Virus record (IMG/VR): IMGVR_UViG_3300014494_000005
Coordinates: 124,001-188,000 of that record
Length of the DNA: 64,000 bases
Strand: one strand, 5' to 3'
The notes beneath the pieces were generated by a model that saw only the letters and a list, made by a program, of their open reading frames with translations, had not been told where the DNA came from and searched no databases. Position numbers and translations under genes: made by a program. Below, piece by piece: positions 376 through 21,722 of the stretch. The number at the start of each line of letters is the position of its first letter. Positions within the stretch are counted from its first letter, which is position 1.

Positions 376-1409
376 GTAACAGCAAGTATATCTTGTGTTG
401 CATCATTAAGACTAATAATATGTGTTGTACCTGAAGTTGTAACAGTAATTCCTGTTCCTGCTTTAACATCAGTAACATGATTAAAATAAACAAATAATAA
501 TGGAGTAGTGTCAACAATTATAGGGTCATCCGTTGCTAATACCCATGAAGTATTTTTATTTGTATCACCACTTAAAACCCATGCATATGAACCAGAAACT
601 ACTTCACCACTTGGTGTACCATCGAAATCTATTGCACGTGTCCACGTACTTGCACTTGCAATCCAAATACCATTTGTTTTACCACTTGGTATAAATGGTA
701 TTTGATTTTTTATTAAAACTCTATCACCATTTAAAAGTATAATACCATCAATTGTTGATAATCCACTGAAAGGATATGTTAAATTTGTTGTAGTAGCTAC
801 TTTAACTACTTGTTTAGGTTTTAAACCAGTAACTATTTCATCCGCATATTGTTTAGTTATAAGAGAACGATTAGTGAAATAACTTTCATAATCACCACCA
901 TATTTTATACCACCATTGTCTTCATAAGAAAATGAACCACCTGAAAATAAAAAAAGTAAACCAACATTATCAATACCAAAAATAGTTGTTAAACCACTTG
1001 TAGATACTTGAAAATCGGTGAGATTTGATAAACTTATATTATGTAAACCAATACCATTAATTGTTGTTCCACTTAAAAGATTACCACCTAATGCAACTGT
1101 TGTTCCACTATTTGCAAGATGTAAACCATTTGTTGCACCAGTTAATGTACCACTTCCACTTCCAACTTTTATCCAACTACTTGTTGAAGTATAGTTGTTA
1201 GCATCACATAAATAGAATAATCCTCTATTTACACCTGAAGCAACTGAAACTACTGCACCATCATAAAGCCAAACACTACCACTTCCACACCATGTTGCAG
1301 GTAATGTTAGGTCAGCATATGTACCAACTAATTGTTTTGCATCGATAGGTGCTTTTAAAAGACCTTCGAAATTTGCTGCAAAATTAAATGTACCTATATT
1401 TCTTGACAT
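1..1409 (-). CDS. Tail fibre-like structural protein, runs off the left edge; ~29-aa Cys-containing repeats
   Basis: Not in ORF track (no stop in window). ATG at 1409 gives MSRNIGTFNFAANFEGLLKAPIDAKQ; contains VKVATT..IDG..L.NGDRVLIKNQ..NGIW..WTRA motif typical of phage fibre proteins and TGATNGxCKYDxHNxCL repeats. Confidence 0.7.
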   Translation of the reverse strand, partial: MSRNIGTFNFAANFEGLLKAPIDAKQLVGTYADLTLPATWCGSGSVWLYDGAVVSVASGVNRGLFYLCDANNYTSTSSWIKVGSGSGTLTGATNGLHLANSGTTVALGGNLLSGTTINGIGLHNISLSNLTDFQVSTSGLTTIFGIDNVGLLFLFSGGSFSYEDNGGIKYGGDYESYFTNRSLITKQYADEIVTGLKPKQVVKVATTTNLTYPFSGLSTIDGIILLNGDRVLIKNQIPFIPSGKTNGIWIASASTWTRAIDFDGTPSGEVVSGSYAWVLSGDTNKNTSWVLATDDPIIVDTTPLLFVYFNHVTDVKAGTGITVTTSGTTHIISLNDATQDILAVTITGATNGVCKYDSHNVCLDNTIQTILNSTLTGVTGGLTKYSCHDACLSTITQNILNISVTGATNGICKYDNHNICLDGTVFNSVLTGATNGICKYDSHNVCLTTITQNTLNTSVTGATNGVCKY

Positions 1410-4506: not shown

Positions 4507-5235
4507 TCATTTTGTATTTATTAAAATACTTATATTATTTTTTAATATTTCTGAAAGATTTTTCTTTTCAGTATATGGAATACGCAATAATTTAATATTA
4601 TTGTTTAATGCATATTCTGTTTTTAATTTATCGTTTAATTTAGTTTTTTCAAATTTTATATTACCGCCAAAATGTTTAAAAATTTTATGGTGTTGTTCAC
4701 CATCATATTCAATTAATAAATTTTGATTTGGCAAATAAAAATCAAAAAATAATTTATATTTATTATTTTTACAATCATCAAATTTTTTTTGATATTCAAA
4801 TAAAACATTATTTTCTTTTAAATATTTTATAATATTTTCTTCGCCTTTCGAATTTTTACAAATAGGACAACCTTGACTACACAAATGAGCATTAGGTTTT
4901 TGTAAAAATTCACCATGTTTTTTACAAATTATATTTATCTTTTTATGTGCATTAACATATTTTACTAATGAATAATTATACTTATTATCATGTATAATAT
5001 TTGCCTTTTCAATAAATTCCTCTATCGTTGATTTTTTACTTGGATGTGAACACTTTGAACAACCATGACCATCTAAATGGTCAAATGGTATTTGCTCAAA
5101 TATTCCATGTTTTGAACAAACTATTTTAATTTTATTTCTATTACCCGTATATTCAACCAAAGAATAATCATAAATATTATTATGTATTTTATTTGCTTTT
5201 TCAATAAATTCTAATGTAGTTAATTTATTTTTCAT
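4507..5235 (-). CDS. Putative homing endonuclease (zinc-ribbon repeats + Vsr/PD-(D/E)xK-like nuclease)
   Basis: Repeats FIEKA..IH..YDYS..I.C..HG.F.Q....HL...GC..C; C-terminal FDFYLP..LLIEYDGEQH. Confidence 0.75.
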   Translation of the reverse strand: MKNKLTTLEFIEKANKIHNNIYDYSLVEYTGNRNKIKIVCSKHGIFEQIPFDHLDGHGCSKCSHPSKKSTIEEFIEKANIIHDNKYNYSLVKYVNAHKKINIICKKHGEFLQKPNAHLCSQGCPICKNSKGEENIIKYLKENNVLFEYQKKFDDCKNNKYKLFFDFYLPNQNLLIEYDGEQHHKIFKHFGGNIKFEKTKLNDKLKTEYALNNNIKLLRIPYTEKKNLSEILKNNISILINTK

Positions 5236-5397: not shown

Positions 5398-6504
5398 TTA
5401 TAAAGTAAATTTTTCTTGCTTTCTAGCTTTTTTTCTCAATTCGTTAACTTCTCTATAAGCATTAGGGTCAAATTTTTCTCTTTTAACTATACTTACAAGA
5501 TGATTAAATTCATTTTCAGTAATCACTTGACCAACATAACTATTATTAGTTTCTTTTAAAACATAAGATTTTGGTGCTTTTGCAAAAGTTGATTGTCCTT
5601 CTGTATCAAGAGTTGCATCAAAAGTAAGTTCAAGTAGTTCTTGAATCTTTTCCTGAACATTAGCTGTCATATTCTGTTTTGTTTTCTTTAATGCTTTTTC
5701 AAGTAAATCAACAATATTTTCTTGATGAGTTTTTTTCATTTCATTATATGTTGAAGTAAATTCTTTTCCAGAACTTTTCTTCTTAATTTCAGAAATGATA
5801 GCCAAAGAACCATAACAGTCACGAATCATCAAATCCCATACCTGTTCAGCATATGTGAATGAAGGAAATTTGTCTATTGCAACAATTTCACCATCTATTA
5901 AAACAATAATACCAATAAGATTACGTGGACGTTCAAAATGTGCAATAAACTGTTCAAGTTTCTTATCATATTTTTCGAAATATACATTCAAGTAATTACC
6001 TGTACCAGATTGAGTATCACTACCCAATTTCTGAATAGCAGGATAAATTCTTGAATAACCACCTGTTTGTCCAATTGTATCAAATAACATTTCACGCATT
6101 GATACGGGTATCATACGAAATTCATTAGTTCCACAAAAATAACCTGTTTGTCCACCTTGTACACAACCTGCATCATGATAAGTGGTATTTGCATATTTTT
6201 CCAAATAACCCGCCTTTATCATACCATGATTTTGAGCACTTTGTTTAGTCATAACAGCCATTTGAGTAGGTACAATAACTTCTTTATTTTCTTTATTAGT
6301 AAAACTAATTTGACCATAAGTTTGATTACCTGCTTGAAGCGAAGTTAATGGATTCGCAAATCTAGTATCCAATGAGTTTTCTTCATCAGTTGTCAATGTT
6401 ATTATTGACATATTCATAATAGATTGAATAATAATATTTCCATTTGAATCTTTATGTGGTCTACATCCCTTTAAAAGTTCAGTAAATTCTCTTTGATTAT
6501 TCAT
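5398..6504 (-). CDS. ARPP-1 / DUF6569-like protein
   Basis: 368 aa; KQSAQNH...GCVQGGQ and GIIVLIDGEIVAIDKF resemble the family's KQNR...CVEQGRW and G....I.G.....D.F motifs (recognised by eye). Confidence 0.6.
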   Translation of the reverse strand: MNNQREFTELLKGCRPHKDSNGNIIIQSIMNMSIITLTTDEENSLDTRFANPLTSLQAGNQTYGQISFTNKENKEVIVPTQMAVMTKQSAQNHGMIKAGYLEKYANTTYHDAGCVQGGQTGYFCGTNEFRMIPVSMREMLFDTIGQTGGYSRIYPAIQKLGSDTQSGTGNYLNVYFEKYDKKLEQFIAHFERPRNLIGIIVLIDGEIVAIDKFPSFTYAEQVWDLMIRDCYGSLAIISEIKKKSSGKEFTSTYNEMKKTHQENIVDLLEKALKKTKQNMTANVQEKIQELLELTFDATLDTEGQSTFAKAPKSYVLKETNNSYVGQVITENEFNHLVSIVKREKFDPNAYREVNELRKKARKQEKFTL

Positions 6505-7067
6505 AATTTTTTAATTTTAATGTTATTAATTTTACATTCGTTTAAATATGCCTCATATGCTAATTTTTCATTCGAATATCTACCAATATATTTAATCTTT
6601 CCATTAATTGTAATTCTACTAACCCAAGGATTAGTTTTATCGTTTGGAGAAAATGAAACTCCAATATAATTAGAACTACTTTTCATTTTCTGTCTTGCAT
6701 GATGAGTATTTTCTCTTGCAGTACACCATTCTAAATTATTTAATATATTATCTTTTTTATTACCATTTTTATGATTAATTTGTTTATAATTAAATGGATT
6801 TAAAAGAAATGCATTTGCTACTAATTTATGTACTAAATATGCTTTATTAATACCTTTCTTACCTAATGAAACCATTAAATATCCACCATTTATTTGATAT
6901 GTATTTTTCAATGAACCTTTTAATTTTCGTTTAACACCCATTTTATTTATCACAAATCTATCAACACTTCTTAATCTACCAAAATTACTTATTTGATAAT
7001 ATCCTTCATAATCAATAACATCCTTCCATTTTTCAAATAAAAATAATTTTAATTTATCAAGTATCAT
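6501..7067 (-). CDS. NUMOD4-HNH(-AP2) homing endonuclease
   Basis: WKDVIDYEGYYQISNFGRLRS (NUMOD4); VHKLVA..F...INHKNGNKKDN..NLEWCT..EN (HNH); YIGVS...W...I...YIGRY (AP2-like). Confidence 0.9.
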   Translation of the reverse strand: MILDKLKLFLFEKWKDVIDYEGYYQISNFGRLRSVDRFVINKMGVKRKLKGSLKNTYQINGGYLMVSLGKKGINKAYLVHKLVANAFLLNPFNYKQINHKNGNKKDNILNNLEWCTARENTHHARQKMKSSSNYIGVSFSPNDKTNPWVSRITINGKIKYIGRYSNEKLAYEAYLNECKINNIKIKKL

Positions 7068-7075
7068 ACAAATTA

Positions 7076-8710
7076 TTAATCGTTTATATTAATTTTTTTA
7101 ATTCTTTTAACAGGTGCTGCTTCAAGAGCCAATACCTGATTTTCCAACCAACGTTTTGTATCAATTTCAAGCAATCTTGCATTGATTTGAGGCTGTAATG
7201 CGACTGGATTATTTATTGCCATTGTGACAACACCTTCACCCAATTTTCTTACATTAGCACCCATTTCAGCACTTGTAATTGGTGATATTTGGAACATTGG
7301 AATATTCCTACCACTTTCTGCTTTCCAAATTGAAATAACTTCATTAGTCAATCCATCATAAGCATTTTCATAACCATCTGTTAAAATAAAAATTGCATCA
7401 TATGGTTTTAAAGAATTTTCTTCTTTTAACAAATCAATAAATGATGTTGCCAAATCAGTAATTTCACCTCTAGTATTTACTCTGTTAGATTCTTTTGCTG
7501 AAGCAGTTAGAACCAATGCAGTAAAATCTGCAATAGCCATTGGTGTATTTTTTGATTCATTTTTATCACCAGTCATAGATACACTTTTATCGACAATAAC
7601 ACCAATATTCTGGTAAAAGAATCCCTGAATTTTTTTCTTTTGTGCAAGTTTTACAATTGCTGACCTAATTTCGTCAGTAAAACCATTTTCATAACCAGTT
7701 TTGTAAAGTGCAAGAAAATCAGTTGCTTTTTCCAAATCAACAGTTTTTTCAACACCCAACTTTGCAGTTGATTTGGTTTGACGAACCTGCTGATTTACAG
7801 AAGTAACTTCAACATTCTTACGAATAAGTGCTTTTGTTGCTTCTTTCTGAATATCAGTTGACCACATTGAATGATATTGTGGATGTTTTACACTTGAAAT
7901 TAAACCAAGTAAAACTTCTTCTGGTACATTTTTAATACCAGTAATATCAATTTTTGCTTTCTGATATTCACTTAAAAGAGGAAATTCAGTTGCATTATAT
8001 GCTACGCCACTATCTTTTTTAAATAAAAATAATAACAATTTGAATGCTTTAATTGAATCACCATTGAAATATTTCAATATACATTCATTTACAATACTCA
8101 TTTCTTTTTCACTTCCAAGCAAAGTTGCTCCATTAATATTTATTTGTTTTTGAGCAATTGAAAGTAATATTGATGTTTTCTTAACACCATATGCATGCCT
8201 AAGTACTTCAGCAATTTTATTACGATATTTCATTGAATAGAATTCAAGATTTGCTTGACCCCAAATAAAACCAAGCATAATTTTTCTTGTTCTTTCATTG
8301 TTTACTTTTTCATTCTTCAAATCAATGAAAAGACGTAATACATATGGTAAACCATTTTCGCCAAGATTGTTTAATGCAGAAAGTACTGCCTTATCACTTA
8401 AACCATTATCATACCAATCAATTGGATTAACAATATTACATGCTCCACCCCTTAAAGTATTTTTGAATTCATTCAAAAGTACTTCAGAAACAAATCTACC
8501 AGTAGCTCCTTTTTGACTTGCTATAATCAATGGGAGTTCCTTTGAAAGTTTATACAGGTTCTTTATTTGACCCTGAATTGCTTTCATTTGTTCGTCTTTA
8601 CTGTGATAGTAAGTTGCTGAACTTTTACTACCAGATGCAATAGTAAGACCATCAATTAATGATTGCTTAACTGTTGCCAACATTTTCTGTGTTAATACCA
8701 AATTTTCCAT
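7076..8710 (-). CDS. Divergent Ro60/TROVE-like RNA-binding protein with C-terminal vWA domain
   Basis: MIDAS VDKSVSM, TDLA, IFILTDGYEN; N-terminal SGSKSSATYY and MKYRNK...VLRHAY echo Ro60 GxxxGTYY and KYxxR..DLLRLxH; likely start MENL at 8710 (8770 overlaps upstream gene). Confidence 0.65.
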   Translation of the reverse strand: MENLVLTQKMLATVKQSLIDGLTIASGSKSSATYYHSKDEQMKAIQGQIKNLYKLSKELPLIIASQKGATGRFVSEVLLNEFKNTLRGGACNIVNPIDWYDNGLSDKAVLSALNNLGENGLPYVLRLFIDLKNEKVNNERTRKIMLGFIWGQANLEFYSMKYRNKIAEVLRHAYGVKKTSILLSIAQKQININGATLLGSEKEMSIVNECILKYFNGDSIKAFKLLLFLFKKDSGVAYNATEFPLLSEYQKAKIDITGIKNVPEEVLLGLISSVKHPQYHSMWSTDIQKEATKALIRKNVEVTSVNQQVRQTKSTAKLGVEKTVDLEKATDFLALYKTGYENGFTDEIRSAIVKLAQKKKIQGFFYQNIGVIVDKSVSMTGDKNESKNTPMAIADFTALVLTASAKESNRVNTRGEITDLATSFIDLLKEENSLKPYDAIFILTDGYENAYDGLTNEVISIWKAESGRNIPMFQISPITSAEMGANVRKLGEGVVTMAINNPVALQPQINARLLEIDTKRWLENQVLALEAAPVKRIKKININD

Positions 8711-8720
8711 AATATATAAT

Positions 8721-9551
8721 TTATTTATTAAGTGCAAGTTGAATTTTCTTTGATTTTTCAACAAAATCACGTAATCTATTTGTTACATTTTTACTCATTT
8801 CATCAGTAAGATGACCACCCTTTGCCATAAGCATTGTTTCAGCAACTACCGCAATACCTTCTAATATTATTGCTTGGTCATGTTGCATTTCATCAATCCT
8901 CATTTTCAGTTCCAAATAATCCTCAGAAACATTTTGTTCAGGATAAAACGCTTGATTTAACCATTTTAATCCTTCTTCACCAACCATAATACGTTTTATA
9001 TATTTGTTACTTTCTAATGGTTCGCATGTAAAATAACCTTTATTAATAAATTCTGGAAAAGGTTTATTATGTTCATCAAGAATTCCTCTCAAACGTAATT
9101 GTTCATAAATTTTATATCTTCCGGTCTTACAATTACTATTATTCTTCAAAACATTTGTTGCTTCACTTAAAGAAAAAACAATTTTTCTTATTTTTTCTTG
9201 TGTTGCAGTAATTCCATATTTGAACAACTCTTTTATTCTGTCATTACACCAAAAATAAAATTCTGGTGAAAGCCACTGTGCAAAAATTAAAGCAATATCT
9301 TCATGTATCCAAGTTCCTTGTGCAGATTTATCATTACCACCCTGCCTAATCATCACTAAATCAGCCGTATTGATATTCTTCAACTCGGCATATTTAGCAA
9401 TAATTCTTTGTGCAGTATCAGTTTTTAACCAAAAATTTGGTTTAACATCAAAAAGATTTGCCATTTCCGTGGCATTTATCATAACATTACTGCCTGTGAG
9501 AAATGAAATTTCATTTCCTTCAAATTCAAATTTTTTAATTTCTTCTTTCAT
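8721..9551 (-). CDS. KilA-N domain DNA-binding protein with antirepressor (ANT/KilAC-like) domain
   Basis: INATEMA...GTWIHEDIALIFAQWLSPEF; GRYKIYEQLRLRGIL..P..EFINKGYF..GEEGLKWL. Confidence 0.85.
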   Translation of the reverse strand: MKEEIKKFEFEGNEISFLTGSNVMINATEMANLFDVKPNFWLKTDTAQRIIAKYAELKNINTADLVMIRQGGNDKSAQGTWIHEDIALIFAQWLSPEFYFWCNDRIKELFKYGITATQEKIRKIVFSLSEATNVLKNNSNCKTGRYKIYEQLRLRGILDEHNKPFPEFINKGYFTCEPLESNKYIKRIMVGEEGLKWLNQAFYPEQNVSEDYLELKMRIDEMQHDQAIILEGIAVVAETMLMAKGGHLTDEMSKNVTNRLRDFVEKSKKIQLALNK

Positions 9552-9603
9552 GATATTTTAAATTGAATTTTTATATTATCAAAATCTAATTAATTTTTGA
9601 TGC

Positions 9604-9634
9604 CAAATATATAAAAAGTTTATTTAAAATCCAA
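9604..9634 (-). promoter_or_regulatory. Bacteroidota-type promoter for the KilA-N / Ro-like / HNH / ARPP operon
   Basis: Minus strand TTG (9632-34), 20 nt, TATATTTG (9604-11). Confidence 0.7.
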
Positions 9635-9676
9635 CTATTATACCAAAAGAATATCAAAATATTACAAAAAACAAAA

Positions 9677-9723
9677 AAATGGGCAAGTATTGATTAATTT
9701 CTTAATCAAATCCCCGCCCATTT
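9677..9723 (-). terminator. Terminator-like hairpin closing the ncRNA array
   Basis: AAATGGGC/GCCCATTT outer and TTGATTAA/TTAATCAA inner stems, followed by a T-run on the minus strand. Confidence 0.65.
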
Positions 9724-9755
9724 CTATTTTAGAAAAACACTTCTTTCAAATAAGA

Positions 9756-9847
9756 GAAGAAGTTTAGTTGTAATTTGGTAAGTTTGTCCCCTCTCTCACG
9801 AAGGGGATTTCATTTTTACAATTTACTGTATTCACAACAAGTTCTTC
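9756..9847 (-). ncRNA. Y-RNA-like structured RNA C (conserved stem + TCCCCT/AGGGGA hairpin)
   Basis: GAAGAA/TTCTTC and GTTGTGA/TTACAAC stems; motif AAGAACTTGTTGTGAATACAGTA shared with neighbours. Confidence 0.7.
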
Positions 9848-10013
9848 AGTATTCCTTTTTTAGAAAAAAAAGCACTTCTGCTCGAAAAACCATTTTTAAC
9901 CAATTAAATGTTAGGTGATATAATTTGTTTTTGTAAAAAACTCTGATATCAACAACTAAAAACTTGCGGGTTTAATTTGTTATTATTAACAACTTTTTAC
10001 CGCTTTATAACTT

Positions 10014-10158
10014 AGGGAACAATTTTAAAGTATTTGTTGTTTTTGTTTTGCAAGTTTAACTGACTTGTGACTTAACCAGCTTGTCTAATTATTCAATTTT
10101 GGCGAATAATGATGGACTCGAACCATCGAAATTACTGTAAACACTTTACGTTTTCCCT
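10014..10158 (-). ncRNA. Y-RNA-like RNA B containing a circularly permuted tRNA-like domain (YrlA-like)
   Basis: AGGGAA/TTCCCT and TAAAGTGTTT/AAATACTTTA stems enclose T arm GATGG-TTCGAGT-CCATC, acceptor ATTATTC-GCCA-AAATT-GAATAAT, D arm GAC-AAGCTGGTTAA-GTC, anticodon arm CAAGT-CAGTTAA-ACTTG. Confidence 0.8.
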
Positions 10159-10196
10159 TTGTACTATTATGCAATTATATATCGCATTTAAATTTG

Positions 10197-10333
10197 TGGG
10201 GAGAGCAGGATTTGAACCTGCACATCATTGTTTTAACGACAATTGCTTTACCTTTTACTGAAAATACAATCAGTTCTCTCTGTTAAGAGAGCAGTGAGAT
10301 AGTATTTTTTGTTTTTTATTTTGCTATCTCCCC
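10197..10333 (-). ncRNA. tRNA-like RNA D with ~65-70 nt D-loop insertion carrying the shared stem motif
   Basis: Acceptor GGGGAGA/TCTCCCC, T arm GCAGG-TTCAAAT-CCTGC, anticodon arm ATTGT-CGTTAAA-ACAAT; insert AATACTATC..CTCTCT-TAAC-AGAGAG-AACTGATTGTATTTTCAGTA. Confidence 0.8.
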
Positions 10334-10359
10334 ATATATTTTAAAGAACTTTAAAAATT

Positions 10360-10448
10360 AGAAGAAATTTGTTAGTATTGTTTTTCTGCCGTCACTCATG
10401 GACGGCATACATTATTTTTCAACTGCTGTAAACACTATCAGTTCTTCT
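10360..10448 (-). ncRNA. Y-RNA-like structured RNA A (conserved stem + TGCCGTC/GACGGCA hairpin)
   Basis: AGAAGAA/TTCTTCT and TAGTGTT/AATACTA stems; motif AAGAACTGATAGTGTTTACAGCA. Confidence 0.7.
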
Positions 10449-10525
10449 CATTTTGATTAAGTTGGCGCAGTCTTCTTTTGTGACTTACTTTCAACGGAGT
10501 GTATGCCGTGACCTCTTAATCTTTG

Positions 10526-10597
10526 TAGCGGGAGAGGGACTTGAACCCCCGACCTTTTGGTTATGAGCCAAACGAGATGCCTCTTCTCCACCCCGCA
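10526..10597 (-). tRNA. tRNA-Met(CAT), initiator-like
   Basis: TGCGGGGTGGAGAAGAGGCATCTCGTTTGG-CTCATAA-CCAAAAGGTCGGGGG-TTCAAGT-CCCTCTCCCGCTA; T1:T72 mismatch; CCA not encoded. Confidence 0.92.
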
Positions 10598-10644
10598 ATA
10601 TACTTTTTAATCTTTTTAAAGAACGTTATATCATTTTGACGATG

Positions 10645-10675
10645 CAAATCTATAACACATTTTTTAATTGTGCAA
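10645..10675 (-). promoter_or_regulatory. Bacteroidota-type promoter for the tRNA/ncRNA array
   Basis: Minus strand TTG (10673-75), 20 nt, TAGATTTG (10645-52); GTATTTAT motif also at 10721-28. Confidence 0.7.
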
Positions 10676-10768
10676 GTTTTTTTCAAAAAAAATAAAAAAT
10701 ATTTTACAACGTCTGGAAAAATAAATACGTAGAAATTTCAAAAAAGTTATTGTTTTTTATAAAATATT

Positions 10769-13700
10769 TTAATCATCTTTTATAACTCTCTGATTTTGAC
10801 GTGCTTTATTTAAAATATTAAATACATTTTTTTCATTTTCTTGTGGCTCATCAGGGTCAATTAATAATTTATTTTCCAATTCTTTTATATTAATATTTTT
10901 ATTTGTTCTTTCAATTAATGGTTTTATTGTTAAATTTTCTTCTTTAATCTCACGATTTTTTTCAACAATATTATTATCAATTTCTTTAACAAAAACTCCC
11001 GGTGGAACAAATTTAGTTAAATCTAATGATTTTTTAATATCTTCTAATTTTACTTCTGGTTGATTAATAATTTCATTAATTGTACTACCTGATTCACCAT
11101 TCCATTCAAATGGTTCTTTTTTTTCATCCCTTTTTATTTGTTCTTCATGAAATATTACTTCAGGATGAATTATTTCTTCATTTAATTCTTCAACCACACC
11201 ATTAATTTCCAGTATTGCTTCGTTGGCAATATCAATTATTTGTTTAATTTCATTTTGATTTAAATCTATTCTTGTAGTACTAATATGAATATTTTCTATT
11301 TGTTTAACAGGAACACCATGTATCTCACCTTCAATCTCTCTTCTCATTTGTTCAATAAAATCACTACTTTCAGCTTTAATCGGTTCGGTCTTAACAATAG
11401 GTTCTTCTTTTTTTACAATAGGTTCGTCAGTATTTGTTTTTATTACAGTTTCATTTTCTTTTACTGTATTTTGTTCAATTTCAAATTCAGAATTGTTTTG
11501 CAATAATCTATTAATTTCAGTAGAAGATAAATTTACAACATCAACAGCATTTTTAGAATCTTCAGCAAGTTGACTAACAACAACATGCATTTTATTTGCA
11601 GTACTTTCAACTTTATTTACATCATTTTCATCGTAATGTTTCAGTTTATTCTTTACAGGATATTTTGAGTCAGTTATAATAATTTGCATTGTATCATTAT
11701 TAAAAATACAATCTTCAAATGTTTGTCCATCTTTTGCAAATCTTGCTTTAAGAATACTAATATTAGCAAAATTTGCATCTTGTTGTGCTGGTGTTTTAGC
11801 AACTGACATAAAAAAATGTGCTTTTTGAATTCTTTTAATATTGCCACCTGTTTGTTGTGCTCCAACAATTGCAGCACCAAAACCAGAACGATTAGTTTGA
11901 ATTGCTGACCATGCAGGTATATCAAAATCTGAAGCAAGTGCTTCAAAAGATTTTACTATTTGTAATTCAGCTTCATTTCTATCTGGTGATTTTTTATGAG
12001 ATTCAAGGCAATCAAGATAATCTATTACAAGTATATCAAATTTAAAACCATATTTTTTTTGATATCCTATCATCCAATTTTTAATATCCAACATTGTAGT
12101 ATTTTCCTGACTAAATTGTTTAATCAAAAGTCTACCTTTTCCTTCTAATGATTCTGCTTTTTCTGTTGCAATTTTAAAAACTCTTGCATTTTCATCCTCA
12201 TCATCAAGTTTACTTAATGCAGATTTTGCCCAAATAGTATAATGTTTACGTTTAATCTGTTCTTTTGTATCTTCAATTATAATTTGTGCAACATTTTTTT
12301 CTTGTTCATAAGCAGTATTAGCAATAATTGTAAGTGCAGTAGTATTATGTGTTAAAATATAATCATCAATTATATATAAATGGTCATTATTTTCAACATA
12401 TATACATGTTGCATCTTCTTCATGTGAATATTCAATATTTTTTATAAATTTATTATATTCATATTTATCACGAATTACAATTCTATCAAGTTTGGTAGGT
12501 AAAGTACATGGTTTAATACCATTGTTTGGAAAACTTATGGTTAAACAATAATTTTTTTTACCTAAAACTTTTACACCATTTTTATTATACGATTTAATTT
12601 TTTCGTTAATTCTACATGTTCCACCCAATGATAATACTAATTCTCGAACATTTTTTGATAATTCTTTTGAAACTGTAGAATAAATAATTGAATGATTTTT
12701 ACCAACACCACCATCTGAATCAATTAAACCTTGTAATAATTTTTCTCTATATTCGATACAATTATATAAATAAATATTAGGAATAAATTTATTAGTTGAA
12801 TCAGTACCATATAAATTAAGTTCTGTTTCTAAAACATTTCTCGAATTTATTAATGATATTCGATATAATTTTTTATAATTTTCTTTTCTTCCTTCATATT
12901 CATGAACAATAACATTTTTTTCAAGATTACATATTTTATCAACAATAAATAAATCTGATGTTATAATGTGTGGTTGATTTTTTCTTGTTAAACATCCATC
13001 ACCCAATAATACCCCCATTATATAAGGGTCAATTTTAACCTCTAATTTATTAAATTGAATTGGTAATACATTAGGTAATCTATAATTTAAATTATTTTTT
13101 ATTTTAATATCTTCCATAATTTCAGACGTTTTTAATATCTGAAATGTATGGTCAGGAATACTTAATGTTTTACCATTTATATTAGTTTTTTGATTTCTTT
13201 GTTTAAATGAATTAACTGCCCATAAATGTTCTACATCACAATAAGATATTGTTTGGTCTGAAAAAGTAACTTTATATATTTTTCTTTTACCTTGTGGATA
13301 TACTGCTAATATTTTTTGTTTTTTTCCGTCACTACCAAAAATATAATCATTAACTTTTAATGTACCATTTTCAACCCAACCATTTGGTGTTAATACTTTA
13401 TGGCTATTTGGCAAGGCTTTTCCTACACCTGATGGTGTTAATATTAAACCAATTTCACCTTTACCAAGACCACCACCAGTCAATGAATCTATTACACCAA
13501 TTCCAGTAGGTATTGGTTGTCTAAATTCTTTTCTTAATGCTTTTTCAATACCTTCTATTACTTCTTCACAATCATCTTCATCCTCACCAATATGTGTAAT
13601 TTTTTGAAATTTTTCTTCAATTGCTGCAATAACATATTTACTTTTAATTTCACCATTTTTTACTTTATCAATAATACCTTCAGCTAATTTACGATATTCT

Positions 13701-14089
13701 TGTTGTTTAATAAAAGAATTTGTAGATTTTTGTATAACATCTCCATCATAAAGCATTTGTTTATTAATAATTCTTTCATTCCAAAGTTCAATACGTTTAA
13801 TTACAGCAAATAATGATTCTTCTTCAATTACATTATTTGGAGTTTTATATTTATTAATTGCTTGATGAATACTTTGATTTTGAAGATTTGGAACTTTCTG
13901 AAATTCTTTAAAATATTCTAAAATAATTAAAAATAATCTTCTAAGATTTGGGTCATCAAAATATTCAATTGCTATATCTGGAATTATTTTTTCTGCAAAC
14001 TCTGGTTCAACTAACAACTGCCACATAAGATGTTGTTGAAATTCAGGACCTAAATATGATGATAATGTATTTTCTGTTATATCTGCCAT
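10769..14089 (-). CDS. Replicative DNA helicase (gp41/DnaB family) with intein and acidic C-terminal extension
   Basis: IPTGIGVIDSLTGGGLGKGEIGLILTPSGVGK|TT Walker A split by intein; DILVIDYLD; WSAIQTNR; ILKARF. Confidence 0.92.
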   Translation of the reverse strand: MADITENTLSSYLGPEFQQHLMWQLLVEPEFAEKIIPDIAIEYFDDPNLRRLFLIILEYFKEFQKVPNLQNQSIHQAINKYKTPNNVIEEESLFAVIKRIELWNERIINKQMLYDGDVIQKSTNSFIKQQEYRKLAEGIIDKVKNGEIKSKYVIAAIEEKFQKITHIGEDEDDCEEVIEGIEKALRKEFRQPIPTGIGVIDSLTGGGLGKGEIGLILTPSGVGKALPNSHKVLTPNGWVENGTLKVNDYIFGSDGKKQKILAVYPQGKRKIYKVTFSDQTISYCDVEHLWAVNSFKQRNQKTNINGKTLSIPDHTFQILKTSEIMEDIKIKNNLNYRLPNVLPIQFNKLEVKIDPYIMGVLLGDGCLTRKNQPHIITSDLFIVDKICNLEKNVIVHEYEGRKENYKKLYRISLINSRNVLETELNLYGTDSTNKFIPNIYLYNCIEYREKLLQGLIDSDGGVGKNHSIIYSTVSKELSKNVRELVLSLGGTCRINEKIKSYNKNGVKVLGKKNYCLTISFPNNGIKPCTLPTKLDRIVIRDKYEYNKFIKNIEYSHEEDATCIYVENNDHLYIIDDYILTHNTTALTIIANTAYEQEKNVAQIIIEDTKEQIKRKHYTIWAKSALSKLDDEDENARVFKIATEKAESLEGKGRLLIKQFSQENTTMLDIKNWMIGYQKKYGFKFDILVIDYLDCLESHKKSPDRNEAELQIVKSFEALASDFDIPAWSAIQTNRSGFGAAIVGAQQTGGNIKRIQKAHFFMSVAKTPAQQDANFANISILKARFAKDGQTFEDCIFNNDTMQIIITDSKYPVKNKLKHYDENDVNKVESTANKMHVVVSQLAEDSKNAVDVVNLSSTEINRLLQNNSEFEIEQNTVKENETVIKTNTDEPIVKKEEPIVKTEPIKAESSDFIEQMRREIEGEIHGVPVKQIENIHISTTRIDLNQNEIKQIIDIANEAILEINGVVEELNEEIIHPEVIFHEEQIKRDEKKEPFEWNGESGSTINEIINQPEVKLEDIKKSLDLTKFVPPGVFVKEIDNNIVEKNREIKEENLTIKPLIERTNKNINIKELENKLLIDPDEPQENEKNVFNILNKARQNQRVIKDD
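12344..13417 (-). mobile_element. Class 3 (Ala1, WCT) intein with LAGLIDADG endonuclease, 358 aa
   Basis: Starts ALPNSHKVLTPNG, ends ILTHN|T; HLW (block B), ATCI (block F); VLLGDG and GLIDSDG motifs. Confidence 0.88.
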
Positions 14090-20618: not shown

Positions 20619-21722
20619 ATGAAATATAATACAGAAACATTTATTGAAAAAGCTAAAGAAATTCATGGCGATAAATATGACTATTCTTTATCGGAATATA
20701 AAAAAAATCATTTAAATGTATCAATTATTTGTAAAAAGCATGGAGTTTTTAAACAGATACCTGCTAATCATACAAGAAAAACTAATCCACATGGTTGCCC
20801 TAATTGTGCGAGTAATAAAAAATTAACAACCAAAACATTTATTGAAAAAGCTAAAGAAATTCATGGCGATAAATATGACTATTCTTTAGTTAAATATATT
20901 GGCGCACATGATATTATAAAAATTATTTGTCTTAAACATGGAATTTTTGAACAAAAAGCATTTGCCCATTTGCAAAATTATGGGTGTCAAATTTGTGGAA
21001 ATAATAAAAAATTAACAAAAGAAATATTCATTAAAAAAGCTAAAGAAATTCATGGCGATAAATATGACTATTCTTTATCGGAATATAAAAATAGTCACAC
21101 TAAAATAAAAATAATATGTCCCAAACATGGAATTTTTGAACAAAAGCCAAATAATCATTTATCAAAACAAGATTGTTATAAATGTGGAGAAATTATTAGA
21201 AGCAATAATAAAATTTTAAAAGCTAAAAATAGTTTTATTGAAAAAGCTAAGAAAACGCATGGTGATAAATATGACTATTCTTTAGTTAAATATATAAACT
21301 GTAGGTCTAAAATAAAAATTATTTGTCTTAAACATGGAATTTTTAAACAATCACCGCATTCACATATAAATAATCATGGATGTCCTGATTGTTATATTTC
21401 AAAGGGTGAATTTAAAATTAAAGAAATTTTAAATAATAAAAATATTAATTTTATATTTCAAAAATCATTTGATAATTGTAAAAATGAAAATAATAAAAAA
21501 TTAAAATTTGATTTTTATTTACCAAAACAAAATATTTTAATTGAATATGATGGAAAACAACATTATGAACCTATTGAATATTTTGGTGGCTTGAGTTCTT
21601 TTAAAATTACAAATGAATATGATAATATTAAAAATAATTATGCTAAAAATAATAATATTAAATTAATAAGAATACCATATTATAAATATAAAATTATTAA
21701 TAAAATATTAAATTTTTTATGA
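20619..21722 (+). CDS. Putative homing endonuclease (4 zinc-ribbon repeats + Vsr-like nuclease)
   Basis: Four FIEKAKEIHGDKYDYS repeats, near-identical at DNA level; FDFYLP..ILIEYDGKQH; paralog of 4507..5235. Confidence 0.8.
   Translation: MKYNTETFIEKAKEIHGDKYDYSLSEYKKNHLNVSIICKKHGVFKQIPANHTRKTNPHGCPNCASNKKLTTKTFIEKAKEIHGDKYDYSLVKYIGAHDIIKIICLKHGIFEQKAFAHLQNYGCQICGNNKKLTKEIFIKKAKEIHGDKYDYSLSEYKNSHTKIKIICPKHGIFEQKPNNHLSKQDCYKCGEIIRSNNKILKAKNSFIEKAKKTHGDKYDYSLVKYINCRSKIKIICLKHGIFKQSPHSHINNHGCPDCYISKGEFKIKEILNNKNINFIFQKSFDNCKNENNKKLKFDFYLPKQNILIEYDGKQHYEPIEYFGGLSSFKITNEYDNIKNNYAKNNNIKLIRIPYYKYKIINKILNFL

What the first reader, a model, noticed from the sequence alone, without database searches (positions are those of the whole stretch)
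10197..10333. Complete tRNA scaffold with the shared stem grafted, permuted, into its D-loop
Normal acceptor, anticodon and T arms are present, but ~65-70 extra nt sit between TAGC and GGTAAAGC. They hold the motif stem in reversed order (3' strand first, capped by CTCTCT-TAAC-AGAGAG). B permutes the tRNA and D permutes the handle, giving two topologies of the same handle+tRNA fusion at different graft points. The anticodon loop CGTTAAA lacks U33 (GTT shifted by one; nominal anticodon TTA). tRNA scanners would likely call this a pseudo-tRNA or intron-containing tRNA, or miss it.
Basis: partly seen in the sequence, partly recalled or inferred. Interest (0 to 1): 0.82.

Follow-up and report, generated by a model that had tools for sequence, protein, structure and literature searches.

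The report
tRNA-shaped phage RNA with Ro-handle
A giant peat-soil phage encodes an expressed, conserved 137-nt RNA with a complete tRNA fold whose D-loop carries the conserved hairpin 'handle' also found on three neighbouring small RNAs beside a Ro60-like gene. It is most likely a new layout of Y-RNA-type tRNA mimic, not a working tRNA.

Summary
On the minus strand, 10333..10197 folds as a 7-bp acceptor stem, a 5-bp anticodon-like arm and a canonical T arm. A 70-nt insert sits between G10-C11 and G18-G19. The insert is the handle module of three neighbouring RNAs (A, B, C), with its strands in reversed order and a capping loop.

- **Conservation:** 32 distinct homologs keep 99.4% of pair cells paired, against about 50% in slid controls. 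Compensatory changes occur in 14 of 29 pairs. About 70 copies occur in related huge phages, and two lie in LR756500.1, where the neighbouring protein is only 28% identical.
- **Not a decoder:** cutting the insert out in silico makes ARAGORN call a tRNA, but with 9 different nominal anticodons across homologs.
- **Expression:** four peat metatranscriptomes cover the cluster at 43-99x, against 0-17x on flanking genes. The unspliced form is present and no spliced joint was seen.
- **Partner genes:** the 564-aa gene downstream has a Ro60 fold (model pLDDT 91; the top 12 PDB hits are all Ro60). It is always followed by an ARPP-domain gene.

Best reading: a Y-RNA-like tether with a free tRNA acceptor end. 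Binding to the Ro60-like protein is inferred, not shown.

The parts
10327..10333 (-). Acceptor stem, 5' strand (GGGGAGA).
   Evidence: Pairs with 10198-10204. Paralogs carry other, covarying acceptor stems: all 7 pairs change on both sides in the wider alignment A3, which also holds ordinary tRNAs.
10323..10326 (-). U8, A9 and the 5' half of a reduced D stem (G10, C11).
   Evidence: T8, A9 and G10 are invariant and C11 is at least 90% conserved. G10-C25 and C11-G24 are the only Watson-Crick D-stem pairs.
10306..10322 (-). A-rich single-stranded linker (about 17 nt) leading into the handle.
   Evidence: Unpaired in the minimum-energy and consensus folds. The same A-rich linker precedes the 3'-type handle strand in B.
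10299..10305 (-). Handle proximal stem, 3'-type strand (AUACUAU).
   Evidence: Pairs with 10262-10268. Helix 3 is 99% paired with compensatory changes. It is homologous to the B 3' strand (repeat family D2).
10292..10298 (-). Handle internal-loop strand (CUCACUG).
   Evidence: Conserved and unpaired.
10276..10291 (-). Handle distal stem with cap (CUCUCU-UAAC-AGAGAG). In A, B and C the equivalent stem is formed by the two ends of the RNA.
   Evidence: Helix 4 is 100% paired and 3 of 4 pairs show changes on both sides. The cap loop varies in sequence and length.
10269..10275 (-). Handle internal-loop strand carrying the invariant AACU.
   Evidence: A59, A60, C61 and T62 are invariant. AAC is also invariant in B, and AACU is kept in LR756500.1.
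10262..10268 (-). Handle proximal stem, 5'-type strand (UGUAUUU).
10253..10261 (-). Conserved UCAGUAAAA joint between the handle and G18-G19.
   Evidence: C74, A75, G76 and T77 are invariant. CAGUAA is also conserved after the handle 5' strand in B.
10245..10252 (-). GGUAAAGC: G18 and G19 of the D-loop and the 3' half of the D stem.
   Evidence: G82, G83, G88 and C89 are at least 90% conserved. Rfam aligns this stretch to the tRNA D-loop.
10227..10243 (-). Anticodon-like arm (AUUGU-CGUUAAA-ACAAU). It has no U33, and the nominal anticodon is UUA.
   Evidence: The stem is 100% paired with compensatory changes. The loop is not conserved in sequence or length.
10222..10226 (-). 5-nt variable region (GAUGU). 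U48 is invariant.
   Evidence: T112 is invariant. Together with A15 it could form an A15:U48 Levitt-type pair (inference).
10205..10221 (-). T arm (GCAGG-UUCAAAU-CCUGC).
   Evidence: G53, T54, T55, C56, A58 and C61 are invariant. 4 of 5 stem pairs show changes on both sides.
10197..10204 (-). Acceptor 3' strand plus discriminator A (10197). CCA is not encoded.
   Evidence: The next base (10196) is C in 57 of 57 homologs. One metatranscriptome contig ends against the adapter at 10196 or 10195.
10339..10353 (-). Leader box (GTTCTTTAAA type) just upstream of the D 5' end.
   Evidence: The GTTC[T/A]TT core lies within 45 nt upstream in 45 of 57 homologs. It also precedes the window's tRNA-Met.
10525..10597 (-). 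Ordinary tRNA-Met (CAT) at the head of the RNA cluster.
   Evidence: ARAGORN; Rfam 56.3 bits.
10354..10456 (-). RNA A: handle in normal order, with its ends in the distal stem, enclosing a plain hairpin.
   Evidence: The fold has z = -3.9. The handle motif matches with 0 mismatches.
10010..10175 (-). RNA B: handle 5' strand, T arm, closed acceptor hairpin (loop starts GCCA), D arm, anticodon arm, A-rich linker, handle 3' strand.
   Evidence: (34 pairs, 21 with changes on both sides).
9752..9856 (-). RNA C: handle in normal order enclosing a G+C-rich hairpin.
7076..8770 (-). 564-aa Ro60-like protein (helical-repeat ring plus vWA domain with a MIDAS DxSxS motif). It has no Pfam hit.
   Evidence: The AF2 model has pLDDT 91.4 and pTM 0.90. 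The top 12 Foldseek PDB hits are all Ro60/TROVE, E from 7e-8 to 1e-3. Atlas lead. Invariant D394, S396 and S398.
5398..6504 (-). ARPP-1 domain protein, the obligate downstream partner of the Ro60-like gene. In this window an HNH endonuclease gene (6501-7067) separates the two.
   Evidence: Pfam PF20208, E = 9e-12. It is adjacent in 63 of 63 loci and in 3 distant relatives.

Best explanation
D is a stable non-coding RNA of a huge, AT-rich phage from peat and permafrost. It combines two modules.

1. **A near-complete tRNA body.** It keeps the acceptor/T-arm coaxial helix, the elbow nucleotides (U8, A14, G18, G19, U48, G53, T54, Psi55-equivalent, C56, A58) and an anticodon-like arm.
2. **A portable handle.** This is an A-rich linker followed by a two-part helix. 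The helix has an asymmetric internal loop carrying the conserved AACU, and it is followed by the conserved CAGUA. In D the handle leaves the tRNA body from the variable 5' part of the D-loop, where an insertion need not disturb the L-shape.

The proposed mechanism is that of a Y RNA. The handle is the docking site for the Ro60-like ring protein encoded 1.4 kb downstream, which always comes with an ARPP-domain partner. The tRNA-shaped body then brings that protein to something that recognises tRNAs. Candidates are tRNA processing, repair or modification enzymes, the translation apparatus, or host tRNA-cleaving defence nucleases.

Unlike known YrlA RNAs, D keeps native tRNA ends. It is probably cut out of the cluster transcript by RNase P and a 3' tRNA-processing activity, and it may receive CCA.

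- **Shown here:** the fold, its conservation and covariation, the modular reuse of the handle, expression of the unspliced form, linkage to the Ro60-like/ARPP gene pair, and the non-conserved 'anticodon'.
- **Inferred:** handle-protein binding, tRNA-type end maturation, and the nature of the recruited partner.
For: - **Fold and covariation:**. After in-silico excision of the insert, ARAGORN calls a tRNA (17 of 20 deletion variants of the window copy; 30 of 32 homologs).
- **Shared handle:** it occurs in four clustered RNAs on one strand. The strands are homologous between B and D, including the A-rich linker and CAGUAA.
- **Family size:** about 71 full-length matches of at least 84 bits in 65 related loci, often 2-3 paralogs per locus with different acceptor stems.
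- **Deep conservation with the protein:** LR756500.1 has a Ro60-like protein only 28% identical. It still has two D-type RNAs upstream on the same strand (71 and 56 bits), keeping AACU and the CAG of the CAGUA joint.
- **Linkage found from the RNA side:** 16 of 16 D-type hits with at least 3 kb of downstream sequence have the Ro60-like gene 0.47-2.4 kb downstream on the same strand.
- **Protein fold:**
- **Expression:** word depth is 43-99 over about 9682-10508 in four metatranscriptomes, against 0-17 on flanking genes. The insert is present, no joints were found, and one adapter-flanked end lies 1-2 nt past the discriminator.
- **tRNA-like flanks:** the leader box and the C-first trailer are shared with the adjacent true tRNA-Met.
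- **Precedent in the literature:** Y RNAs with tRNA-like domains are encoded next to Ro60, including in phages (PMC4201824). A phage Ro60 binds phage Y-like RNAs and host PNPase (PMC12135203).
Against: - No binding data exist.
- The protein is Ro60-like by predicted fold only. TM-scores are 0.43-0.52, and neither Pfam nor PDB sequence or profile searches reach TROVE.
- The canonical Ro60-binding motifs (GGUCCGA; GNCGAAN0-1G / CGAA) are not conserved in the handle. Only about half of the B homologs happen to read CGAA.
- In known Y RNAs the Ro60 site lies in the stem formed by the RNA's ends. Here it is an internal capped hairpin.
- Most homologs keep a well-formed 7-nt loop with U33 (35 of 48) and a purine at position 37 (45 of 48). 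Some tRNA-like use of that loop is therefore not excluded.
- The RNA evidence comes from assembled contigs, which cannot show the mature sizes, a CCA tail or rare spliced forms. The discrete 3' end is seen in one run only.
- No tRNA-processing or RNA-repair genes were found in the window.
Confidence: 0.6

Rival explanations
1. D is a tRNA decoy, bait or processing cassette that does not depend on the Ro60-like protein. On this reading the handle binds another factor (ARPP, a host protein such as Hfq on the A-rich linker, or a nuclease), or it merely stabilises or times the maturation of tRNA-like RNAs. The tRNA bodies, with their drifting anticodon loops, soak up host tRNA-targeting nucleases.
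For: - The anticodon-like loop drifts fast among otherwise near-identical copies.
- In other members the two handle strands simply flank a complete tRNA, like a leader-trailer duplex.
- ARPP is as tightly linked to the cluster as the Ro60-like gene.
- The conserved A-rich linker is single-stranded.
Against: - The only RNA-binding fold recognisable in the conserved gene pair is the Ro60-like ring.
- The arrangement of Y RNAs next to a Ro60 gene has direct precedent (PMC4201824, PMC12135203).
- In D the handle is internal, so end-processing cannot remove it.
Confidence: 0.2
2. D is a working tRNA with an expanded D-loop, either an ochre suppressor (nominal anticodon UUA in this copy) or a Ser-UGA-like decoder.
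For: - The scaffold minus the insert is called tRNA-Stop(tta) by ARAGORN.
- 18 of 32 homologs read UGA in a well-formed loop.
- The elbow and acceptor features are intact.
Against: - Nine different nominal anticodons occur among homologs that share almost the same acceptor stem, and 6-nt and 8-nt loops also occur.
- This copy has G at position 33.
- The D stem has only two Watson-Crick pairs.
- There is no long variable arm, as a bacterial tRNA-Ser would need (established knowledge).
- Window ORFs are long and dense under the standard code, so no stop-codon recoding needs a suppressor.
Confidence: 0.06
3. D is an intron-containing tRNA gene whose 70-nt insert is spliced out.
For: Removing the insert restores a scanner-detectable tRNA.
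Against: - Unspliced D is present in high-depth contigs in four RNA runs and no joints were seen.
- The insert is too small for a group I intron, and no Rfam intron family matches it.
- The insert's sequence is conserved and is shared with non-tRNA neighbours, as expected for a functional module.
- The product after excision would still have a 2-bp D stem.
Confidence: 0.02
4. D is a decaying tRNA pseudogene hit by a dispersed repeat.
For: Scanners fail on it. One lineage (L010/L011) does have a D copy broken by a 1-kb insertion.
Against: - Compensatory changes occur in every helix, counting the wider alignment A3 for the two D-stem pairs.
- The RNA is retained at 28% protein identity.
- It is strongly expressed.
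Confidence: 0.01

Closest known systems
YrlA (Y RNA-like A) of bacteria and mycobacteriophages (Chen et al. 2014, PMC4201824; structure preprint 10.1101/312249)
   Same: - A non-coding RNA encoded a few kb from, and on the same strand as, a Ro60-type gene.
- It combines a protein-binding helix with a tRNA-like domain that keeps the T arm, the D-loop G18-G19 and the tRNA tertiary nucleotides.
- It is also found in phages.
   Different: - YrlA resembles a circularly permuted tRNA. Its acceptor stem is closed by a loop, it has no free CCA end and no anticodon loop, and the Ro60 site lies in the stem formed by the RNA's 5' and 3' ends, with a GNCGAAN0-1G motif.
- D has native tRNA ends, an open 7-bp acceptor stem and a complete anticodon-like arm. 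Its handle is a capped hairpin inside the D-loop, and its conserved loop motif is AACU.
- The partner protein is Ro60-like by fold only.
[quoted passage not shown]
   Same: It has a 7-bp acceptor stem and a tRNA-like domain that tRNA end-processing enzymes accept, so it ends up with a tRNA-like 3' end.
   Different: There the free end is produced by cutting open a closed acceptor loop. The window's neighbour B, whose loop encodes N-CCA in 30 of 47 homologs, is the closer analogue. D is transcribed with the ends already in tRNA order.
Thermus phage phiLo Ro60 with Yrl1/Yrl2 (PMC12135203)
   Same: A phage-encoded Ro60 homolog with several Y-like RNAs encoded directly upstream. The proposed role is to capture host RNA-handling enzymes.
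   Different: - Yrl1 and Yrl2 are classical stem-bulge-stem Y RNAs with a CGAA motif, and no tRNA-like body is reported for them.
- phiLo Ro60 is a recognisable TROVE protein.
- No ARPP partner is described.
Deinococcus radiodurans Yrn1
   Same: It shows that the order of tRNA-like elements relative to the Ro60-binding stem can differ between Y RNAs (PMC4201824).
   Different: Yrn1 has only partial tRNA features (a T arm and a 6-nt 'anticodon' loop), and its Ro60 stem is terminal.
tmRNA and viral 3' tRNA-like structures
   Same: These are tRNA mimics with a free acceptor end that is processed, and charged, by tRNA enzymes.
   Different: ARAGORN finds no tmRNA here. D has no tag reading frame or pseudoknot domains, and it is not at the end of a genome.
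Circularly permuted and intron-bearing tRNA genes (algae, archaea)
   Same: Unusual gene topologies of a tRNA body. B resembles the permuted type.
   Different: Those genes are processed into ordinary decoding tRNAs. D is not permuted, its insert is retained in the RNA, and its anticodon is not conserved.

Membership tests
Canonical tRNA (Rfam RF00005 / ARAGORN) | 7-bp acceptor stem stacked on a 5-bp T stem with a GTTCRANNC-type T-loop | tested here: met
   The T-loop nucleotides are invariant, and both stems are about 100% paired with compensatory changes.
Canonical tRNA (Rfam RF00005 / ARAGORN) | D arm with a 3-4 bp stem and a 7-11 nt loop | tested here: not met
   Only G10-C25 and C11-G24 pair. 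70 nt lie between C11 and G18.
Canonical tRNA (Rfam RF00005 / ARAGORN) | 7-nt anticodon loop with U33, and an anticodon conserved among orthologs | tested here: not met
   The window copy reads CGUUAAA, with G at position 33. There are 9 nominal anticodons among 32 homologs, and 6-nt and 8-nt loops also occur.
Canonical tRNA (Rfam RF00005 / ARAGORN) | Reaches the detection thresholds of tRNA scanners | tested here: not met
   ARAGORN finds nothing. Rfam scores 25.2 bits against a threshold of 29, and matches only positions 9-63. The thresholds are met only after in-silico removal of the insert.
Canonical tRNA (Rfam RF00005 / ARAGORN) | Aminoacylated and used in decoding | not testable with these tools
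   Needs charging and ribosome assays.
YrlA-type Y RNA | Encoded within a few kb of a Ro60 ortholog and on the same strand | tested here: met
   In the window, D lies 1.4 kb upstream of the Ro60-like gene on the same strand. 16 of 16 RNA-first hits have the gene 0.47-2.4 kb downstream. The same holds in LR756500.1.
YrlA-type Y RNA | The partner protein is a TROVE/Ro60 family member | tested here: inconclusive
   By fold, yes: the top 12 PDB hits are all Ro60, E from 7e-8 to 1e-3 and TM 0.43-0.52, from a model with pLDDT 91. By sequence, no: there is no Pfam TROVE hit and no PDB profile hit.
YrlA-type Y RNA | Ro60 site in the stem formed by the RNA's 5' and 3' ends, with a GNCGAAN0-1G (CGAA) motif | tested here: not met
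   The handle is an internal capped hairpin. Its conserved loop nucleotides are (G/A)AACU. CGAA is present in only part of the B homologs and is not conserved.
YrlA-type Y RNA | tRNA-like domain with a T arm, D-loop features and tRNA tertiary nucleotides | tested here: met
   U8, A14, G18, G19, U48, G53, T54, T55, C56, A58 and C61 are invariant or at least 90% conserved.
YrlA-type Y RNA | Closed acceptor stem-loop (no free CCA end) and no anticodon loop | tested here: not met
   D has an open acceptor stem with a discriminator and a complete anticodon-like arm. For the YrlA features, see 10.1101/312249.
YrlA-type Y RNA | Bound by the Ro60 protein in vivo | not testable with these tools
   Needs immunoprecipitation or in-vitro binding.
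Intron-containing tRNA | The insert is removed from the transcript | tested here: not met
   Four metatranscriptome runs hold the unspliced sequence at high depth and report no joints. Caveat: contigs can hide rare forms.
Intron-containing tRNA | Recognisable intron class (group I core, or bulge-helix-bulge) | tested here: not met
   The insert is a 70-nt hairpin. No Rfam intron family matched it at E up to 10.
tmRNA | tRNA-like domain plus a tag reading frame, detectable by ARAGORN or Rfam | tested here: not met
   There is only a 7.8-bit chance match.
Circularly permuted tRNA gene | The 3' half precedes the 5' half, with a closed acceptor stem | tested here: not met
   D is in native order. 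The neighbour B does meet this feature.

The most novel reading that the evidence does not exclude
D is matured exactly like a tRNA: cut by RNase P and a 3' tRNA-processing activity, then CCA-tailed and perhaps charged. Because the handle leaves from the D-loop near the elbow, both the acceptor end and the anticodon-like loop stay exposed. D would then be a 'tethering tRNA' that carries a Ro60-like ring and its ARPP enzyme into tRNA-handling machinery such as synthetases, EF-Tu, the ribosome or host anticodon nucleases. The rapidly drifting anticodon-like loops of the paralogs would reflect an arms race with host tRNA-targeting defences. The Ro60-like protein, the ARPP protein and the handle-tRNA chimeras would together form a previously undescribed phage counter-defence or RNA-surveillance module.
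Probability: 0.15. Interest if true: 0.9.

Novelty: new variant of a known kind. Interest (0 to 1): 0.7.

Why it matters
Y RNAs with tRNA-like domains have been known since 2014, but what those domains bind is still unknown. All described cases lack a free acceptor end and an anticodon loop.

This family offers a natural series of the same handle fused to tRNA bodies in at least four topologies. One of them is a full cloverleaf with native ends. The series is conserved across deeply diverged huge phages and is abundant in environmental transcriptomes. It says which parts of the tRNA shape must stay exposed, and it gives defined RNAs and two defined proteins (Ro60-like and ARPP) for binding and structural work.

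It also shows three further things:
- A whole Ro60-like protein family (361 cluster representatives) is invisible to Pfam.
- That family is always paired with an ARPP-domain protein, which links Ro-type RNPs to a predicted ribose/ADP-ribose-acting enzyme.
- tRNA scanners miss a class of tRNA-shaped genes in phage genomes.

Tried and rejected
- **GenBank phages, blastn with the whole RNA gap.** Only the tRNA-Met matched.
- **Sequence route to TROVE.** Pfam on the protein and on 10 distant homologs, phmmer against PDB, and hmmsearch with 11- and 64-sequence profiles against PDB all failed. The best result was a weak vWA hit, E = 0.28.
- **First structure model.** It was made from 11 close sequences and was poor (pLDDT 64). 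It was replaced by the 64-sequence model.
- **Rfam.** At E up to 10, nothing but tRNA is credible in the gap.
- **Sigma-70 promoter scan.** Uninformative in this AT-rich DNA: 8 sites found against 7.2 expected.
- **Kink-turn reading of the handle loop.** Rejected by inspection, because the non-bulged strand next to the distal stem is variable and is not G-A.
- **Pairing between ACUG (loop) and CAGU (joint).** Rejected: ACUG varies while CAGU is invariant, so there is no covariation.
- **Canonical Ro60 motif.** Not conserved.
- **Genes downstream of ARPP (371 and 655 aa).** They look tail-fibre-like at best, not RNA-related.
- **Rest of the window.** It holds structural, glycosyl/methyl-transferase and replication genes, and no tRNA-processing or RNA-repair enzymes.
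- **ORFs in the 1-kb insertion that breaks D in L011.** They gave no clear family.
Full report
**What is there.**
The window is AT-rich (about 26% G+C). Its genes are phage genes: tail sheath, baseplate, a DnaB helicase with an intein, and several HNH endonucleases. The same DNA sits in IMG/VR contigs of up to 349 kb and in peat and permafrost metagenomes.

Between 9552 and 10768 there is a 1.2-kb stretch with no long ORF. The finding lies in it, on the minus strand at 10333..10197. Read 5' to 3', it gives:
- a 7-nt acceptor strand, then U8, A9, G10, C11
- 70 extra nucleotides
- GGUAAAGC
- a 5-bp arm with the loop CGUUAAA
- a 5-nt variable region
- a T arm with the loop UUCAAAU
- the complementary acceptor strand and discriminator A

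The 70 nt comprise a 17-nt A-rich linker followed by a two-part hairpin. The hairpin is AUACUAU / CUCACUG / CUCUCU-UAAC-AGAGAG / AACUGAU / UGUAUUU, and it is followed by UCAGUAAAA.

RNAfold returns exactly this cloverleaf with a hairpin in the D-loop: -37.7 kcal/mol, z = -4.6, and no shuffle out of 200 folds as well. ARAGORN does not call it. Rfam's tRNA model matches only positions 9-63 at 25.2 bits, below its 29-bit threshold. When I cut the insert out in silico, ARAGORN called a tRNA in 17 of 20 deletion variants, with anticodon tta.

**The handle is shared.**
The motif GAACU-N4-GUGUUU-N-CAG occurs four times in the window with 0-3 mismatches. All four copies are on the minus strand between 9826 and 10444.
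- In RNAs A (10456..10354) and C (9856..9752), the two handle strands form the ends of the RNA and enclose a plain hairpin (z = -3.9 and -1.75).
- In B (10175..10010), they enclose a T arm, a closed acceptor hairpin, a D arm and an anticodon arm, in that order. This is a permuted tRNA-like body with the handle at the position of the variable arm.
- In D the strands come in the opposite order and the distal stem is capped.

The strands are homologous, not merely similar in shape. The A-rich linker followed by AAUACU, the loop nucleotides AAC, and the GUGUUU-N-CAGUAA stretch are shared between the B and D consensus sequences.

**Conservation.**
A search with the downstream 564-aa protein fetched 79 related loci. 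D has full-length homologs at 73-87% identity in most of them.

The 32 distinct sequences were aligned. RNAalifold recovered the acceptor, handle-proximal, handle-distal, anticodon-like and T helices, and 14 of its 27 pairs show changes on both sides. I then added the two D-stem pairs by hand and counted the named 29-pair structure:
- 99.4% of cells are paired, against 45-55% when partners are slid by 1-3 columns.
- 86 cells show double changes, against 21 expected.
- None of 500 shuffles reaches the observed values.

A covariance model built from this alignment scores D at 145 bits in the window and nothing else comparable. In 65 loci it finds about 71 full-length members of at least 84 bits. 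Loci often hold two or three paralogs with different, internally complementary acceptor stems. In that larger, model-fitted alignment the two handle helices remain 97% and 99% paired. B is equally well supported: 34 pairs, 21 with double changes.

The strongest test came from LR756500.1, a 462-kb metagenomic phage genome record in GenBank. Its copy of the protein is only 28% identical. Upstream of it, on the same strand, lie:
- two D-type RNAs (71 and 56 bits) with their own acceptor and handle helices, both keeping AACU and one keeping CAGUA (the other reads CAGAA)
- a handle-only RNA
- a complete tRNA (Rfam 51.5 bits) whose leader and trailer are the two handle strands

A still more distant relative has two such flanked tRNAs just after its ARPP gene. 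The handle is therefore a portable module, seen in at least four topologies.

**It is not a decoder.**
The nucleotides that build the tRNA core are invariant or nearly so: U8, A14, G18, G19, U48, G53, T54, T55, C56, A58 and C61. The anticodon-like loop is not conserved.

After the same in-silico excision, 30 of 32 homologs are called tRNAs. They carry nine different nominal anticodons: tga 18; ttg, tgg and gta 2 each; and tta, ttc, att, taa and cga once each. This is despite almost identical acceptor stems.

Among 7-nt loops, U33 is present in 35 of 48 and a purine at position 37 in 45 of 48. Loops of 6 and 8 nt also occur. The D stem has two Watson-Crick pairs. Window ORFs are long and dense under the standard code, so nothing calls for an ochre suppressor.

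**Expression.**
Metatranscriptome runs from peat hold the locus. Logan contigs of four of them were laid on 8900-11300. The word depths were:

| Run | Depth over about 9682-10508 |
|---|---|
| X15 | 43 |
| X16 | 53 |
| X17 | 63 |
| X18 | 84-99 |

Depth on the flanking protein genes is 0-17, and over the tRNA-Met and its leader it is 0-7.

- The contigs carry the D insert, and no joints were reported.
- Several contig ends abut Illumina adapters: 10508 (two runs), 10488, 10150, 9682, 9699 and 10195.
- At 10195 the last adapter base coincides with the genomic T. The end therefore probably lies at 10196, one nucleotide past the discriminator.
- Contigs cannot show mature lengths or CCA tails, and this end comes from one run. 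I take it only as consistent with tRNA-type 3' processing.

**Flanks.**
In 57 non-redundant homologs the base after the discriminator is C in all 57, and the trailer reads CAAA in 36. A GTTCTTTAAA-type box (core GTTC[T/A]TT) lies within 45 nt upstream in 45. The same box and a C-first, A-rich trailer flank the true tRNA-Met at the head of the cluster. Together with the 12-bp acceptor/T helix, this makes maturation by the host's tRNA end-processing enzymes likely. That step is an inference.

**The neighbouring genes.**
The 564-aa protein (8770..7076) has no Pfam, PHROG or PDB sequence match, and profiles do not help. The protein atlas pointed to TROVE/vWA clusters.

A profile search of 1.8 billion representatives found 361 relatives. 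None of ten distant ones carries a Pfam domain. With 64 of them as the alignment, AlphaFold2 gave pLDDT 91.4 and pTM 0.90: a helical-repeat domain followed by an alpha/beta domain. Foldseek's top 12 PDB hits are all Ro60 structures (frog and human Ro60, Deinococcus Rsr, Thermus phage phiLo Ro60). Their E-values run from 7e-8 to 1e-3 and their TM-scores from 0.43 to 0.52 over about 580 columns. Unrelated folds follow after a clear gap.

The vWA MIDAS residues (DxSxS, and the D of a TDG-type motif) are conserved: D394 and D465 are invariant, S396 and S398 at least 90%. It is a Ro60-like protein by fold, not a demonstrable TROVE family member by sequence.

It is always followed by an ARPP-1/ARPP-2 domain gene:
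- 63 of 63 loci show this. 54 have a 12-39 nt gap. The other 9, including this window, have an HNH endonuclease gene inserted between the two.
- All three distant relatives examined show it too.

Searching from the RNA side, 16 of 16 D-type hits with at least 3 kb of downstream sequence have the Ro60-like gene 0.47-2.4 kb downstream on the same strand.

**Most likely mechanism.**
The arrangement matches the Y RNA paradigm: small RNAs encoded beside a Ro60 gene, with one helix for Ro60 and a second module that recruits something else. In YrlA RNAs that second module is tRNA-like (PMC4201824). A phage Ro60 has been shown to bind phage Y-like RNAs and host PNPase (PMC12135203).

I therefore read the handle as the docking site for the Ro60-like ring, possibly together with ARPP, and the tRNA body as the adaptor. 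The insertion point supports this. Positions 16-17 of the D-loop vary in length in ordinary tRNAs and lie on the outside near the elbow (established tRNA structure). A helix leaving from there, or from the variable-arm position as in B, leaves the acceptor end and the anticodon-like loop exposed. What is recruited is unknown. I put this reading at 0.6.

The main rival (0.2) keeps the tRNA-mimic idea but assigns the handle to another factor or to processing control. Evidence for it is the flanked-tRNA members and the equally tight ARPP linkage. The working-tRNA, intron and pseudogene readings are each contradicted by a direct test described above.

**Comparison with what is known.**
Described YrlA RNAs resemble circularly permuted tRNAs. 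They have a closed acceptor stem, no free CCA end and no anticodon loop, and they carry a terminal Ro60 stem with GNCGAAN0-1G (PMC4201824; 10.1101/312249).

D fails three of these defining features and meets the linkage and tRNA-core features. It works like a Y RNA on present evidence, but it is not a YrlA family member. B is closer to YrlA. It still differs in keeping a whole anticodon arm and in encoding N-CCA at the start of its acceptor loop in 30 of 47 homologs. This recalls the M. smegmatis YrlA, which is opened by RNase P and then CCA-tailed.

My literature searches found no description of a tRNA cloverleaf with a Y-type handle in the D-loop. The paper that defined ARPP does not mention TROVE or Ro60.

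**Verdict.**
This is a real, conserved and expressed RNA family, and a new variant of the Y-RNA/tRNA-mimic kind. Its protein partner and cellular target are still to be shown.

Noticed in passing
window 5398-8770 (-); loci L005-L079; L299, L300: The Ro60-like gene is always followed by an ARPP-1/ARPP-2 domain gene. This holds in 63 of 63 loci, and in three relatives at about 25% identity (21-27%). In this window an HNH endonuclease gene (6501-7067) has been inserted between the two. The paper that defined ARPP does not mention Ro60/TROVE.
   Followed up: partly
window 10010-10175 (-) and 47 homologs: RNA B is a permuted tRNA-like RNA with the handle at the variable-arm position. In 30 of 47 homologs the loop closing its 7-bp acceptor stem begins with N-CCA (GCCA in the window). 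This looks like an encoded tRNA 3' end that could be exposed by RNase P cleavage.
   Followed up: partly
L298:3340-3480 (LR756500.1); L299:7800-7940 and 8030-8170; after the second-subfamily D copies (acceptor GGGGAAG) in many main-clade loci: A further topology: the two handle strands flank a complete, scanner-positive tRNA, like a leader-trailer duplex. This type is not present in the window.
   Followed up: partly
window 10339-10353 and 10614-10628 (-); upstream of 45 of 57 D homologs: A conserved GTTCTTTAAA-type box (core GTTC[T/A]TT) lies shortly upstream of D and of the tRNA-Met. Further upstream, a TAnnTTTGCATCGTC element resembles a Bacteroidota -7 promoter box, a resemblance I recall from memory. 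This hints at the host phylum and at one promoter for the whole cluster, at about 10655.
   Followed up: partly
window 10196 and 57 homologs: The nucleotide after the discriminator is C in 57 of 57 D homologs, usually followed by AAA. Full CCA is encoded only rarely, for example in L298:1865-1998.
   Followed up: partly
L011:4095-5222 (also L010): In one lineage the D gene is split inside the handle's 3'-type strand by about 1 kb of foreign DNA with small ORFs of no clear family. It is probably an inactivated copy.
   Followed up: partly
window 612-728 (-): A weak match to the D model (16.8 bits, E = 0.08). It folds (z = -2.5) into a capped hairpin that resembles the permuted handle (AAAUACCAU ... 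AAAC ... AUGGUAUUU) inside a short closing stem. It may be a fifth, degenerate handle element 9.5 kb from the cluster.
   Followed up: partly
window 10457-10524 (-): A conserved stretch between tRNA-Met and RNA A shares UAAGUCACAA with the D-arm/anticodon junction of B but has no stable fold of its own (z = 0.2). Two RNA runs have an adapter-flanked end inside it at 10508.
   Followed up: no
window 10150 (-): One metatranscriptome contig ends against an adapter exactly at the invariant C of the AAAAC loop in B's handle, and nothing covers 10151-10194 in that run. This could be a cleavage site, a reverse-transcription stop, or chance.
   Followed up: no
window 10769-14089 (-): The DnaB-type helicase gene carries a LAGLIDADG/Hom_end intein. 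Three further free-standing HNH-type endonuclease genes lie at 4507-5235, 6501-7067 and 20619-21722, so this region is rich in mobile endonucleases.
   Followed up: no
window 10525-10597 (-): The tRNA-Met has a U1-U72 mismatch at the top of its acceptor stem and lacks the three G-C pairs of initiator anticodon stems. Its identity (elongator, initiator-like or Ile2-type CAT) is unclear.
   Followed up: no
window 58227-59891 (+) and 60343-61941 (-): Two large proteins have Mom-family domains, one with a Vsr-like and one with a restriction-endonuclease-like region. This suggests DNA modification functions.
   Followed up: no
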